Made by a program: the position numbers and the translations under genes. A stretch of 64,000 nt of DNA from Auanema rhodensis. Taxonomy: Eukaryota > Animalia > Nematoda. Every line of letters starts with the position of its first letter. Position 1 is the first letter of the stretch. Location of the stretch: positions 8,494,001 through 8,558,000 of the forward strand of contig OZ059898.1 in NCBI GenBank assembly GCA_964057225.1, read 5' to 3'. Of this stretch, positions 51,883 through 60,663 are shown in pieces. The notes below the pieces were generated by a model. The model was not told the DNA's origin. It searched no databases and saw only the letters and a program-made list of their open reading frames with translations.

Positions 51883-55777
<3,895 letters not shown>

Positions 55778-55969
55778 CTTCAAGAATTAAACAGTTTACG
55801 TTCAATCCATAATTGAATTTAAAACACTAATCGAAATCGAAATAAAGATTCTCAAAGTAAAAATTAAATATTTATTAAGGCACTTCTAACAAAACAATGT
55901 ACAATAACAATAATTCTACGGAACACGTGACCGATATAGCAACAACTATACAATAATCTAATGACCAAA

Positions 55970-58900
55970 CTATGCAATTGTATACACTTTTGGCTTGACC
56001 AAATATCTAAATGAGCGTTTAGCCAAGGAACCTCGTGAAAATTTATGTCTGGAATAAGAAATGTTAGTTCACTATTAAAATTTAAAAGAAAACCTCAATC
56101 TCTTTGTATAACTTTTTCCAACAACGCTCTCTACTTCATTTCTATATCGCATTGCTACCTCAACTACATTTATAGGATCATCAGATATATTTGTTTGAAG
56201 AGTGAGATCAGTGCTAAATAATAACGAATAAAAAAATTATACATCAATATAATATCTAACCTTTTAGCACACTTATCTCTTAAACGATAATTTTCTTTTT
56301 CGAAGTCTTTCAATGATATAGTATTTACCTTATCACCGAAGAAGAACATTCTGAAAAAACAGAACAATTAAAACAATTTATCCAAAATTACAAACCTATC
56401 AGATGTTAAACCCCAAAGACGTAAAAGACCGTTTCTGGCAGCCATATCAATAGCAACTTCGATTGATTCTCCACTACCTAAATGATAATATCAAGTTATT
56501 TGATTGCGAATATATAAATCAACTCACTTTCCCCAACAATTTCGTTTTTGTCTTGGAAGATACCAACAACATACACAGGTTGGGCCGAATTTACACCTGC
56601 TGACCTAAGAATTCTTGGCTCAATCTAAAAATCTTCTTATCATTAATAATTTGAAGTGAATATCCATACTTCGACAGATCCATCAGATTTGAGCAAATCT
56701 GTCAAAACAGATAAAGGATTAGTTAATGGATAAACGTCAGCAAAATCAACATCCAGTAGTTGGGGAATAACGAAATTGAATACAATTTGTTGAACCTTTT
56801 CTTCACTCAATGTACCACAAAGGGCCCGGAAAGAAGATGCAATCGATACAATTGATGGTGGATGTTCTCCAGTCCTAACAAGGACATCAATGCCTTTAAT
56901 TTTTTACATAAAAAAAAAATTCTATAAGAAAAAAATTTACCCAGATGGCGAGCAATATCAGCAAGAATATCATCAGCCGTCAAATCAGAACAAACAGCTT
57001 CGATAACTTCTTCTGGAGCATTAGGTAATTGGGAACGAAGATAACCTTTTAAAACTTTAGATATATTCGTTACTCCTTAAATAAAAACAATAAGACCAAG
57101 TTCTACACAATTTTAACGACGAACCCGTATTTGACAGTTCTACATTACTCTCTAAGCTATGAGTTTCATCGTTATTGGGAGAATATGCTTGGGACTCAAC
57201 ATCTTTACGAGATGAAAAAGATTCCGTGGTTAAAGCCTAAACATTATTTGTCGGTACTAGAAGGATTTGGCATTCTGCCAACCTGAACAAGTATGTCAGC
57301 TGGTATCTCTGGAACACCTATCCTATGGCCAAAAGCATATAGTTCAGAGGAGTAGTTCCTGGAAGAAAGATGTTTAAGCAAATTCTCCACATACTCTACG
57401 TTAAAAATCTTTACTGATTTGGGTGTGCACGTAAGATTTATATATGGAAACTATAAAAATTATATTTATCGGAATAAAAAGAATAGAAAATCTGTAGAAA
57501 AATACCACATTGTTGAACACTATGCTTTAAGATTCCCGAACATCGGCTACCTAAACACCGTATAAACAAAATGGCACTCCTAATTGTTAAAGAGAAAACA
57601 TATACATTAACATTTAAACGGATGTAAAGCTACTCTAACAACAATCTAGGTCGTGTTTCACACTTAATTACAATTATAGAAATCTCTACATGCGGAACAC
57701 TCCAAATTTAGTCTCAGGAATGGGCTTCTGTAAAGTGGCACGCAAAGCCAGACCAACAACCTTGCGAGTATCCTTAGGATCAATGACTCCATCATCCCAA
57801 AGACGAGCAGAAGCAAAGTATGGATGTCCTTCGGCTTCAAACTTTTGCTCGACTGGACGACGAAGAGCTACATCTTCTGCCTAAACAAACGGATTTTGAG
57901 GCAGAACTGTCATTATGTCCTAACCTCGGTCCATTCTTTGCCTTCTCTCTTTCTCTTATCCTTCTGTACTGTCGCAAGAACATTAGCAGCTTGCTCTCCA
58001 CCCATAACAGAAATACGAGAATTTGGCCACATGAAGAGGAACCGTGGACTATAACAGAAAGAGTGAAAACTTGTTTATAAAGGAATGGATACCTATAACC
58101 ACGACCACACATTCCATAATTCCCTGCTCCATAAGATCCGCCAATAAGAACGGTAATCTTAGGAACAGAAGCACAAGCAACAGCAGTTACAAGCTTTGCT
58201 CCGTTCTTAGCAATACCTCCAGCCTCAGCATCACGACCAACCTAATAATTTCTATTACACTATGCGCAGAGACAAAACCTTCTACCATAAAACCAGTAAT
58301 GTTTTGAAGGAATAAAAGAGGTATTTTTCTTTGACAACATAGTTCAATAAAGTGTGCACCCTTTACAGCAGATTCAGAAAACAGAACACCATTATTAGCC
58401 AAAATACCCACTTTTTGACCATAAACAGTAGCAAAACCTATGAACAAACAATAATAAGCAAATTACGATATCTACGCACCAGTAACTAAAGTTTCTCCAT
58501 AACGCTCTTTGAATTCGTCAAAACGGGAACCATCTACAACCCTAGCGATGACCTCTTTAACATCGAAAGTTTTCTTCAAATTAGCTCCTACGATTCCGTA
58601 GAGTTCTTTTGCTGGGTACAACGGTTCATCAGCTAAACATCGTACTTCACATGAATGCTTTAGTGTGAAAAGCAAACCATTAACGTTGAAAGTTCCAGAG
58701 CCTAGCTCATCAGGGAACCCAGCGACGGCGTTGCGAGCAAGAGAAAGAGCATGATCATCATTCAAAGCATAATAATCAGTAACTCCAGATTCCGAACAAT
58801 GTAGATCGGCTCCGCCGAGAGCTTCAGCAGAAATCTAAAAAAAAAATCTAGTTCTATTTCCCCGATAATCCTCACTTCCTCTCCAGTGGCAGCCTTTACA

Positions 58901-60022
58901 AGTGGAGGACCTCCTAAGAATACTGTTCCATTTCCCTTTACTATAATGGCCTGATCTGACATTGCAGGCACATAGGCTCCACCAGCTGTACAACTTCCCA
59001 TAACGACAGCTAGTTGCGGAATTCCCATAGCACTCATAGTGGCCTATCAGTATCAAAAAATCACCTGACACAGCCGTAAACGAAATACCTGATTATAGAA
59101 AATGCGTCCAAAGTGTTGGCTATCAGCGAAGATATCAGCCTGGCGAGGAAGGTTAGCTCCTCCGGAATCAACAAGATAAATGCATGGTAAACCGTTTTCT
59201 CTTTAAAAAAAAGACAATTAAACAAAAATTTAAAAAAAAAACCTGGCAATTTCCTGAGCTCTCAAATGCTTCTTGACAGTAATTGGATAATACGTTCCTC
59301 CTTTGACAGTTGCATCATTAGCAACAATTACACAAAGTTTACCAGCAACAGAACCAATACCAGTTACAATGCCTCCAGCGGGAACTTCTTCTTTGTCATA
59401 GCAATTGTAACCAGCCAATTGACTAAGTTCAAGAAAAGCACTACCAGGATCGACAAGAGCATTAATTCTTTCTCGAGCAAGTAACTTATTACGACTTTTA
59501 TGAAGTTTAACAGCTTTTTCGCCTCCGCCTTGATTAATCTTATCAATTTTGGCTTTGAGATCGTTAACAATTTCATTCATCTGCTGTGAATTTTGGGAGA
59601 AATCCTCAGAGGAGGTATCGATGGCGGAATTAATTGGTTTCCAAATTGTTGCATAAGGATTTGTTGAACAATGATGGTCACGAACAGTGATGCTAAAATA
59701 AGGGAGCCATGAGCTCAGCTCAAAACACCCATGAATATTTTGGTGACACACGCCAAATCAAGTAAAGATATTATAATTAAACTATACCAATTAGGATATG
59801 CAGATCTGTGAATCAATGGATCGGCTCCAAGTATTTGACGCCTGTGATATAAATCTTTCAAATAAGTCCTCTCCCATCTAGCCCGTAGAAACCGTACTAT
59901 AAGCATATGCATGAAAAATTTTAATTAAAATGTTGCAAGCAAACTATAAAATTAGAGAGCGACTCACATGATTGATGGTTTGTTGAGCGTGGTCCCAACC
60001 GTTGAGCAAGGCACCCAAGCAT
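55970..60022 (-). CDS. mrpl-44: Mitochondrial ribosomal protein L44 (leader exons 60022-59968 and 59896-59788, body from 57358)
   Basis: RSAYPN TG|...ttccag|G AAC TAC gives [17 protein letters not shown]. Also [27 protein letters not shown] and [16 protein letters not shown] (RNase III-like plus dsRBD pattern of MRPL44). Confidence 0.9.
57686..60022 (-). CDS. MCCC2: Methylcrotonoyl-CoA carboxylase beta chain (same leader exons, body from 59692)
   Basis: [11 protein letters not shown]; [27 protein letters not shown]; [10 protein letters not shown]; [13 protein letters not shown]; [11 protein letters not shown]; [12 protein letters not shown]; ends FGVFRM*. Confidence 0.95.
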
Positions 60023-60198
60023 ATTTAAACTAGAACAAAATTATTCAACCAATCGATAATTTTATTTTTTAATGCATAAATAACTGTTTAAATAAAACAA
60101 AATATTTTGATTATATTATTTGAAAGAGGTAGTGCTCCAATATATTAACTACCGTAATATTACTCGCGGTGGGACCAATTTTTCGACCTCGACCGAGT

Positions 60199-60207
60199 CG
60201 CGGGAAA
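60199..60207. promoter_or_regulatory. E2F/DREAM-type site (TTTCCCGCG on - strand) in the divergent promoter of cyclin A and mrpl-44/MCCC2
   Basis: Exact match to the E2F consensus TTTSSCGC in a CpG-containing patch. A CHR-like TTTGAAA lies near 60119. Upstream of a cyclin A gene. Confidence 0.5.
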
Positions 60208-60663
60208 TCATAATTTTTGGACGGCGTCTTCACGCTTATCGGTTACACTCACGTTATTATTGTCTCTTTTACATTTGGGGTTGGTTGTTTTTATGTCTCA
60301 TTTATGATGCACATGTGTTAGTTCGAAAACTTAAGTTTAATTTAAAAACTTTTTTTGTTGCTCATGTTTTTTTCATAAGTCTTAACAGTGTATTGAGAGT
60401 GACAGGTTTGTGAGTGTGACTATCATAATGGATTTCATCAAGTTGCTTGGTGATTTCGTATCGAGGATTTCTTCCTAGTATAAGGATATTAATGATCCAA
60501 ATTATATTTAGTAATAAAGTTCAAATATTTATAATTTCGTTTCAGTGTATGCAATAAATTTTCTCGACTAACCCAGATCTTTCTTCAATTAAATCTTTCT
60601 TTTGATTTTAGTAGGGTATGTCTATTTACCATATATTTTATAATATAATAATATAGTAGAGAA

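What the first reader, a model, noticed from the sequence alone, without database searches (positions are those of the whole stretch)
55970..60022. One mitochondrial leader, two unrelated proteins: MCCC2 and MRPL44 share their first two exons, with MCCC2 nested in an MRPL44 intron
Seen in sequence: exons 60022-59968 and 59896-59788 encode an Arg-rich presequence-like N-terminus ([54 protein letters not shown]) ending TG|gtatag. The proximal acceptor ttttag|C (59692) makes Cys and enters MCCC2. The distal acceptor ttccag|G (57358) makes Trp and enters MRPL44 ([11 protein letters not shown]). Neither body has an in-frame ATG at its 5' edge; the only nearby ATGs hit a stop. Inference: leucine catabolism and mitoribosome supply are coupled through competing 3' splice site/poly(A) choice. 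The leader resembles the MRPL44 N-terminus, so MCCC2 probably inserted into the intron and captured the presequence. From memory, C. elegans has a similar shared locus (F02A9.4), so this may be conserved rather than new; I could not verify this.
Basis: partly seen in the sequence, partly recalled or inferred. Interest (0 to 1): 0.85.

Follow-up and report, generated by a model that had tools for sequence, protein, structure and literature searches.

The report
Shared leader for MCCC2 and mL44
In this nematode, two coding exons at the 5' end are spliced either to a leucine-breakdown enzyme gene (MCCC2) or, skipping that whole gene, to a mitochondrial ribosomal protein gene (mL44/MRPL44); the layout is real, but it is old and the C. 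elegans reference genome already annotates it.

Summary
On the minus strand, exons 60022-59968 and 59896-59788 encode a 54-residue N-terminus that ends TG|gt.

- **MCCC2 route:** assembled RNA contigs from four runs of one study join 59788 to 59692. This gives a 607-aa MCCC2.
- **mL44 route:** the join 59788>57358 gives a 392-aa mL44. That row was not displayed, but four things support it: the contig breaks, a depth residual, the lack of any other start codon, and mL44 homology that runs across the junction.

The leader is the native mL44 N-terminus. Its second half aligns to residues 40-67 of human mL44.

The C. elegans reference has two products starting at the same base, 608 aa MCCC2 and 394 aa mL44, with the same intron positions. 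Same-species pairs with identical leaders also occur in Haemonchus, Parascaris, Ascaris and environmental transcripts.

I found no paper that discusses it.

Additional findings:
- Many genomes mis-annotate the locus as a fusion of about 940 aa.
- The Steinernema and Ditylenchus MCCC2 N-termini are degenerate copies of the leader, which suggests the shared layout was later resolved by duplication.
- The non-coding stretch between the MCCC2 stop and the mL44 acceptor is conserved.

The same scan noted other shared-leader loci in this genome.

The parts
59968..60022 (-). Leader exon 1, coding part (ATG at 60022; 18 codons plus 1 nt; donor T|gtgagt)
   Evidence: Joint 59896/59968 is seen in all 4 runs. 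The X1 and X2 contigs reach 60031, 2 nt past ttctag|TTTAAATATG, a possible trans-splice acceptor that is not shown.
59788..59896 (-). Leader exon 2 (109 nt; carries the conserved mL44 motif W-E-R[10 protein letters not shown] ... Y-P-N; ends TG|gtatag and is the donor shared by both products)
   Evidence: The same motif heads nematode mL44 proteins and aligns to human mL44 residues 40-67.
59693..59787 (-). Proximal intron (95 nt) between the leader and the MCCC2 body; contains no in-frame ATG
   Evidence: Joint 59692/59788 is in 4 of 4 runs. Frame analysis.
57686..59692 (-). MCCC2 body. Nine exons: 59692-59243, 59200-59088, 59042-58876, 58834-58678, 58632-58478, 58435-58284, 58239-58093, 58048-57924, 57879-57686 (TAG stop at 57688-57686).
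   Evidence: All eight internal joints are seen in the RNA contigs. Pfam Carboxyl_trans hits. 92.4% aa identity to Auanema sp. JU1783 MCCC2 and 80.6% to C. elegans.
57359..57685 (-). MCCC2 3'UTR and the stretch ahead of the distal acceptor. No canonical AATAAA; variant hexamers GATAAA at 57470, TATAAA at 57442 and AGTAAA at 57415. It is part of the 2,429-nt intron of the mL44 mRNA.
   Evidence: It is 66% identical to Auanema JU1783 (76% over the first 100 nt), against about 47% for introns. RNA contigs run colinearly through it.
55970..57358 (-). mL44 (MRPL44) body. Nine exons: 57358-57283, 57236-57125, 57075-56941, 56893-56670, 56624-56526, 56475-56396, 56350-56261, 56213-56094, 56048-55970 (stop).
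   Evidence: Five internal joints are listed, and contig lengths account for the others. Pfam RM44_endonuclease and DSRM_MRPL44 hits. Orthologues.
55871..55969 (-). mL44 3'UTR with AATAAA at 55876-55871; the RNA contigs end at 55875-55880

Best explanation
This is one transcription unit with one start codon. It lies in a rhabditid nematode whose closest database relative is Auanema sp. JU1783. The two 5' coding exons encode the native N-terminus of mitoribosomal protein mL44. This consists of a presequence of about 20 residues plus about 34 residues of the mature protein. The donor at 59788 has two possible partners.

1. The proximal acceptor at 59692, 95 nt away. This yields an mRNA for the MCCC2 precursor (607 aa), which must end at a poly(A) site inside the 327 nt after its stop codon.
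2. The distal acceptor at 57358. This removes the whole nine-exon MCCC2 block as a 2,429-nt intron and yields the mL44 precursor (392 aa).

The balance between the two products is therefore set by competition between the two 3' splice sites, together with cleavage and polyadenylation after MCCC2.

Shown: both acceptors, the proximal joint in RNA, the reading frames, homology, and the same architecture in C. elegans.

Inferred: the distal joint in this species; the position of the MCCC2 poly(A) site; and complete removal of the leader from MCCC2 at a conserved R-x-H-H-C site at the start of its body, which would be the remnant of its own former presequence end. By contrast, mL44 would keep leader residues from about 21 to 54.
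For: RNA contigs join 59788 to 59692 in 4 runs, and the MCCC2 contig stops 30 letters (28 in X4) into leader exon 2, the overlap length expected at a branch in an assembly built from 31-letter words (31 is the index word size stated). The mL44 contig stops at the shared G at 57359. In X1 and X2 an unlisted record of about 30+30 letters, at depth 75-83 and 51-56, is needed in exactly the leader-exon-2 bin and the mL44-exon-3 bin. Leader contig depth is roughly the sum of the two bodies in X1 and X2 (a weak measure). No in-frame ATG is available for either body. The motif Y-P-N-W-N-Y..E.Y-A-F-G-H-R spans the distal junction and is conserved in nematode and human mL44. C. elegans has two products from one start, 608 aa Carboxyl_trans and 394 aa mL44, with identical intron positions and phases, and an RNA contig encodes the exact 608-aa protein. 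Leaders are 100% identical within a species, and the proteins diverge at the junction residue, in Haemonchus, Ascaris and a pair of environmental transcripts, with 57 of 58 positions identical in Parascaris. The same layout is present in Auanema JU1783 DNA.
Against: The distal joint row was not displayed for this species. In run X4 a single 3,121-nt contig runs colinearly from MCCC2 through its 3'UTR into spliced mL44 exons, and no junction contig is needed by the depth tables there. Contigs cannot give 5' ends, 3' ends or isoform ratios. All four runs come from one study and are RNA only by inference, because their contigs are spliced. The processing sites are inferred from alignment and from my recollection of the human transit peptides.
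Confidence: 0.9

Rival explanations
1. A true bifunctional fusion protein of about 940 aa (leader, MCCC2, mL44 body), as annotated in many nematode genomes. It would be made by splicing from the cryptic donor AT|GTAG, formed by the last Met codon plus the stop codon, to the acceptor at 57358. That splice is in frame.
For: Models of 931-961 aa (1,012 and 1,024 aa in two further models) that carry both Pfam domain sets exist for Necator, Ancylostoma, Haemonchus, Cylicocyclus, three Caenorhabditis species, Toxocara, Anisakis, Panagrellus and Mesorhabditis belari. In Haemonchus and Panagrellus the model joins ...F-R-M directly to the first mL44-body residues (N-Y-A-S-E... and D-Y-P-S-E...). The phases match.
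Against: The RNA contigs keep the TAG stop and run colinearly past it. The bins around 57686 balance exactly, with no spare depth for such a junction contig. The C. elegans reference lists 608 aa and 394 aa as the longest products. Haemonchus also has a separate 394-aa mL44 with the leader. GTAGAG is a poor donor.
Confidence: 0.04
2. Two independent genes. MCCC2 would be nested in an mL44 intron with its own trans-spliced 5' end at 59692 and translation starting at Met92, and the leader-to-MCCC2 joint would be a by-product.
For: Nested genes and SL trans-splicing are common in nematodes. Contigs cannot exclude minor SL-spliced forms.
Against: Only the leader joint is seen at 59692, in 4 runs. 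Residues 55-91 are conserved coding sequence. A Met92 start would lack any presequence. The C. elegans, Auanema, Nippostrongylus, Pristionchus and Parascaris MCCC2 proteins all begin with the leader.
Confidence: 0.03
3. An operon-type arrangement. mL44 would be a downstream cistron, released by 3' end formation of MCCC2 and SL2 trans-splicing at 57358.
For: The candidate poly(A) hexamer GATAAA at 57470 lies about 110 nt upstream of the acceptor, which is an operon-like spacing. Colinear RNA covers the gap.
Against: The mL44 body has no start codon. Its conserved N-terminus is encoded upstream of MCCC2. The depth residual matches a leader junction.
Confidence: 0.02

Closest known systems
C. elegans chromosome III locus F02A9.4 (MCCC2 608 aa and mL44/mrpl-44 394 aa)
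   Same: It has one start codon and two shared coding exons with the same intron positions and phases. The proximal acceptor gives Cys and leads into MCCC2, and the distal acceptor gives Trp and leads into mL44. MCCC2 lies inside the mL44 span.
   Different: It is a different species: 80.6% aa identity for MCCC2, and 46-55% for the mL44 tblastn segments. The non-coding gap is 389 nt against 327 nt here. The arrangement is present in the annotation, but I found no paper that discusses it; papers call the locus either 'CoA carboxylase' (PMC3096668) or mrpl-44 / F02A9.4 (PMC8282665).
Grass sdh2/rps14 gene (rps14 inside an sdh2 intron, sharing the sdh2 presequence by alternative splicing; reviewed in PMC1543663)
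   Same: Two unrelated mitochondrial proteins come from one transcript. The nested gene borrows the host gene's targeting exon through alternative splicing.
   Different: There the guest gene is a recent transfer from the organelle and the host is a respiratory enzyme. Here the guest is an old nuclear enzyme gene that gave up its own presequence, the host is the ribosomal protein, and the leader also contains mature host sequence.
Cholinergic locus unc-17/cha-1 (from my own knowledge) and nematode operons
   Same: A gene nested in the first intron of another on the same strand, with a common 5' exon and a choice of 3' splice site and poly(A) site.
   Different: In the cholinergic locus the shared exon is non-coding and each gene has its own ATG. 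Operon cistrons have their own start codons and are SL2 trans-spliced. Here the shared exons are coding and neither body has its own start codon.

Membership tests
MCCC2 (3-methylcrotonyl-CoA carboxylase beta subunit) | Carboxyl transferase domain (PF01039) along the body | tested here: met
   Three exon translations hit PF01039 at 64-78 bits against a cutoff of 22.3.
MCCC2 (3-methylcrotonyl-CoA carboxylase beta subunit) | Full-length orthology to proteins named MCCC2 | tested here: met
   92.4% identity to Auanema JU1783 and 80.6% to the C. elegans 608-aa protein over 607 aligned residues.
mL44 (MRPL44) | mL44 RNase III-like endonuclease domain (PF22935) | tested here: met
   Exon 57075-56941 scores 42.3 bits against a cutoff of 27.
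mL44 (MRPL44) | mL44 dsRNA-binding domain (PF22892) | tested here: inconclusive
   A single 33-aa exon scores 20.9 bits, below the cutoff of 27. The whole spliced protein could not be submitted by reference. Orthologues carry the domain.
mL44 (MRPL44) | Homology to mL44 chains of solved mitoribosomes, including the N-terminal segment | tested here: met
   Tested through an orthologue. S. carpocapsae mL44 residues 31-303 align to human mL44 residues 40-311 at E = 3e-28. The window shares the leader motif.
F02A9.4-type shared-leader locus | Both products start at one ATG and share the donor of exon 2 | tested here: met
   The proximal joint is seen in RNA. The distal joint rests on contig breaks, the depth residual, homology and the absence of another ATG.
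F02A9.4-type shared-leader locus | Same intron positions and phases as C. elegans | tested here: met
   exon 1 ends after codon position 1, exon 2 ends TG|gt, and the distal acceptor supplies the G of the Trp codon.
F02A9.4-type shared-leader locus | Separate poly(A) sites for the two mRNAs | not testable with these tools
   Only assembled contigs were available, and they cannot show 3' ends.
Nematode operon | The downstream cistron has its own start codon at an SL2 acceptor | tested here: not met
   There is no in-frame ATG between the upstream stop and mL44 exon 3.

The most novel reading that the evidence does not exclude
The same 54-residue N-terminus is processed in two ways. It is removed completely from MCCC2 at the conserved R-x-H-H-C site, whereas mL44 loses only about 20 residues. 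The conserved non-coding stretch between the MCCC2 stop and the mL44 acceptor regulates the choice between splicing and polyadenylation, so the ratio of a catabolic enzyme to a mitoribosomal protein can be tuned. This ancestral rhabditid arrangement was later resolved more than once by duplication of the leader: in tandem in Steinernema and dispersed in Ditylenchus.
Probability: 0.3. Interest if true: 0.5.

Novelty: already known. Interest (0 to 1): 0.3.

Why it matters
- **Gene structure.** This is a clean animal example of two unrelated mitochondrial proteins drawing on one coding leader, and it has been held for a very long time across Rhabditida.
- **Annotation.** More than ten nematode genomes carry a false fusion protein of about 940 aa at this locus, and the Auanema JU1783 gene set lacks mL44 altogether.
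- **C. elegans genetics.** RNAi clones, tags or deletions assigned to 'F02A9.4', 'mrpl-44' or the CoA carboxylase may affect both products. One paper lists 'mrpl-44' among its clones that activate the mitochondrial unfolded protein response and names 'F02A9.4' in the same context (PMC8282665), which may reflect this.
- **Evolution.** The relic leader copies in Steinernema and Ditylenchus give a worked example of how such sharing gets resolved.

Tried and rejected
- **Spliced proteins as queries.** The full-length spliced proteins have no reference and were not typed in. Searches therefore used single-exon translations and database orthologues. The exact-sequence look-up of this species' own mL44 protein was left out for the same reason.
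- **Read evidence.** Only contigs were available, so starts, ends and ratios could not be read.
- **RNA families.** An Rfam scan of 55800-60300 found nothing.
- **Literature.** Searches for F02A9.4, mrpl-44, mccc-2 and MRPL44+MCCC2 found no description of the arrangement.
- **Relic leaders.** Relic-leader tests were not significant for Bursaphelenchus, Strongyloides, Parastrongyloides, Mesorhabditis spiculigera, Aphelenchoides, Meloidogyne and Plectus. They were borderline for Rhabditophanes and D. destructor.
- **Outgroup.** The Plectus locus could not be fetched because the protein is known from UniRef only, so the state outside Rhabditida is open.
- **Rivals.** The fusion, independent-gene and operon readings were considered and rejected, as given under the rival explanations.
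- **Not available.** TargetP and MitoFates could not be run.

Full report
**The observation**

On the minus strand, the ATG at 60022 opens a 55-nt coding exon with donor T|gtgagt. A 109-nt exon follows at 59896-59788 and ends TG|gtatag. Together they encode 54 residues plus two bases. The first 26 residues carry five Arg and no acidic residue. Leader plus nine exons gives a 607-aa protein with its stop at 57686. Leader plus nine other exons gives a 392-aa protein with its stop at 55970. Exon translations hit Pfam Carboxyl_trans, and the mL44 endonuclease and dsRNA-binding domains. Read colinearly, neither body has an in-frame ATG after the last upstream stop. The first in-frame Met of the MCCC2 body is residue 92.

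**RNA evidence in this species**

Four runs of one study hold 64% of the sampled words of the stretch, roughly its exonic share by my exon coordinates (about 68%). Their contigs are spliced, so they are RNA. All four show the joints 59896/59968 and 59692/59788 and the internal introns of both bodies.

- The 2,046-nt MCCC2 contig ends 30 letters into leader exon 2.
- The mL44 contig ends at 57359, the one G that both possible upstream contexts share.
- These are the overlaps expected at branch points in an assembly built from 31-letter words (31 is the index word size given; that the contigs were built with it is my assumption).

The row for 57358/59788 was not displayed. I therefore balanced the depth tables against the listed contigs. 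Control bins balance to zero. In X1 and X2, the bin holding mL44 exon 3 and the bin holding leader exon 2 each need about 30 more letters, at depth 75-83 and 51-56. That is close to the mL44 contig depth (70.5 and 57.3). This is what a 60-letter junction contig would give. The bins around the MCCC2 stop leave no room for a fusion junction.

Two caveats apply:
- In X4 one 3,121-nt contig runs colinearly from MCCC2 through its 3'UTR into spliced mL44 exons, and no junction contig is required there.
- Contigs cannot show ends or ratios.

**What the leader is**

A search with one mL44 exon returned full-length nematode mL44 proteins. Their N-termini carry R[15 protein letters not shown]...R-S-x-Y-P-N-W-N-Y..E.Y-A-F-x-H-R, so the motif spans the distal junction. 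S. carpocapsae mL44 residues 31-303 align to human mL44 residues 40-311. Deposited mature human chains begin about residue 31. The leader is therefore a presequence of about 20 residues plus about 34 residues of mature mL44. Non-nematode MCCC2 proteins have short, unrelated presequences.

**Conservation**

The same leader heads annotated MCCC2 in C. elegans (608 aa), C. brenneri, Auanema JU1783, Nippostrongylus, Pristionchus, Diploscapter, Parascaris, Panagrolaimus JU765 and Gnathostoma.

In the C. elegans reference, next to a Notch-family gene, two products start at the same base: 608 aa Carboxyl_trans and 394 aa mL44. The former lies inside the latter's span. Intron positions and phases are identical to those in the window. 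An RNA contig encodes the exact 608-aa protein.

Within single species the two proteins have identical leaders and diverge at the junction residue. This holds for Haemonchus (54/54), Parascaris (57/58), Ascaris (56/56) and a pair of environmental transcript-length contigs (40/40).

The window's MCCC2 is 92.4% identical to that of Auanema sp. JU1783. That species' locus is colinear with the window, but its mL44 body is unannotated.

**Mechanism**

One promoter and one ATG serve both proteins. The donor at 59788 pairs with one of two acceptors:
- the near acceptor, which then requires 3' end formation inside the 327 nt after the MCCC2 stop; or
- the far acceptor, which removes the whole MCCC2 block as a 2,429-nt intron.

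The 327-nt gap is 66% identical to JU1783, and 76% over its first 100 nt. Introns are about 47% identical and exons about 79%. This suggests constrained signals, among them a conserved GATAAA at 57470.

I infer that MCCC2 loses the whole leader at the conserved R-x-H-H-C site at the start of its body. That motif also sits at the end of the presequence in nematodes whose MCCC2 has its own N-terminus. From memory, it lies near the position of the human cleavage site.

**Rival readings**

Many genomes predict a fusion of about 940 aa. These models splice from AT|GTAG at the Met-stop to the mL44 acceptor. The RNA contigs here keep the stop, and C. elegans annotates no such product. The independent-gene and operon readings fail because neither body has a start codon and because the leader is conserved on both proteins.

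**Evolution**

In S. carpocapsae the two genes lie in tandem, each with its own N-terminus. The Steinernema and D. dipsaci MCCC2 N-termini are significantly similar to the mL44 leader (z = 10.7 and 5.3; 0 of 2,000 and 0 of 3,000 shuffles reach the score). Most other lineages with separate genes show nothing. This fits a resolution of the shared state by duplication of the leader. The Plectus model suggests adjacency without a shared leader, but its DNA could not be examined.

**Verdict**

It is, however, an orthologue of an arrangement already in the C. elegans annotation. I found no paper that discusses it. The nearest published analogue is the grass sdh2/rps14 gene (PMC1543663). Earlier notes of this scan report other shared-leader loci in the same genome; I did not test them.

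Noticed in passing
window 57282-57879 and run X4: In X4 a single 3,121-nt contig covers MCCC2, its 3'UTR, the unspliced 57358 acceptor and then the spliced mL44 exons. This is either a pre-mRNA intermediate or a long MCCC2 isoform that ends at the mL44 poly(A) site. X4 also lists an odd joint 59993>59788 with one letter between the two sides.
   Followed up: partly
window 60023-60031: The leader contigs of X1 and X2 stop at 60031, two bases past ttctag|TTTAAATATG. This is consistent with an SL trans-splice acceptor at 60030/60029, but no SL letters were reported.
   Followed up: no
window 55600-55880: The next gene on the same strand starts at ATG 55777, right after an AG and about 95 nt after the mL44 AATAAA (55876-55871). 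That is operon-like spacing. Its product is acidic with repeated D-[DE]-L-P-P-T-P-P-P motifs, and RNA contigs cover it.
   Followed up: no
window 57359-57685 vs L005 8356-8661: The non-coding gap between the MCCC2 stop and the mL44 acceptor is conserved with Auanema JU1783 (66% overall, 76% over the first 100 nt), against about 47% for introns. Rfam has no match.
   Followed up: partly
L005 8662-10033 (Auanema sp. JU1783): The mL44 body is present and colinear but has no gene model in that assembly. The shared leader probably hid it from the predictor.
   Followed up: yes
P0057-P0061, P0068, P0071, P0074, P0079, P0084, P0086, P0130: Models of roughly 930-1,020 aa, many named 'Large ribosomal subunit protein mL44', are MCCC2-mL44 fusions. 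In the two I inspected (Haemonchus, Panagrellus) the splice bridges from the cryptic GT at the Met-stop codon pair. They are probably annotation artefacts.
   Followed up: partly
L003 6659-10861 (S. carpocapsae); P0085, P0087, P0097: Steinernema has tandem MCCC2 and mL44 genes with separate N-termini. The MCCC2 N-termini of Steinernema and D. dipsaci are degenerate copies of the mL44 leader (shuffle tests z = 10.7, 3.6 and 5.3).
   Followed up: yes
same genome, other windows: Earlier notes of this scan report two further shared-leader loci in this genome: uL14m with a DUF5522 protein, and XPR1 nested in a methyltransferase gene. The layout may be a recurrent nematode habit.
   Followed up: no
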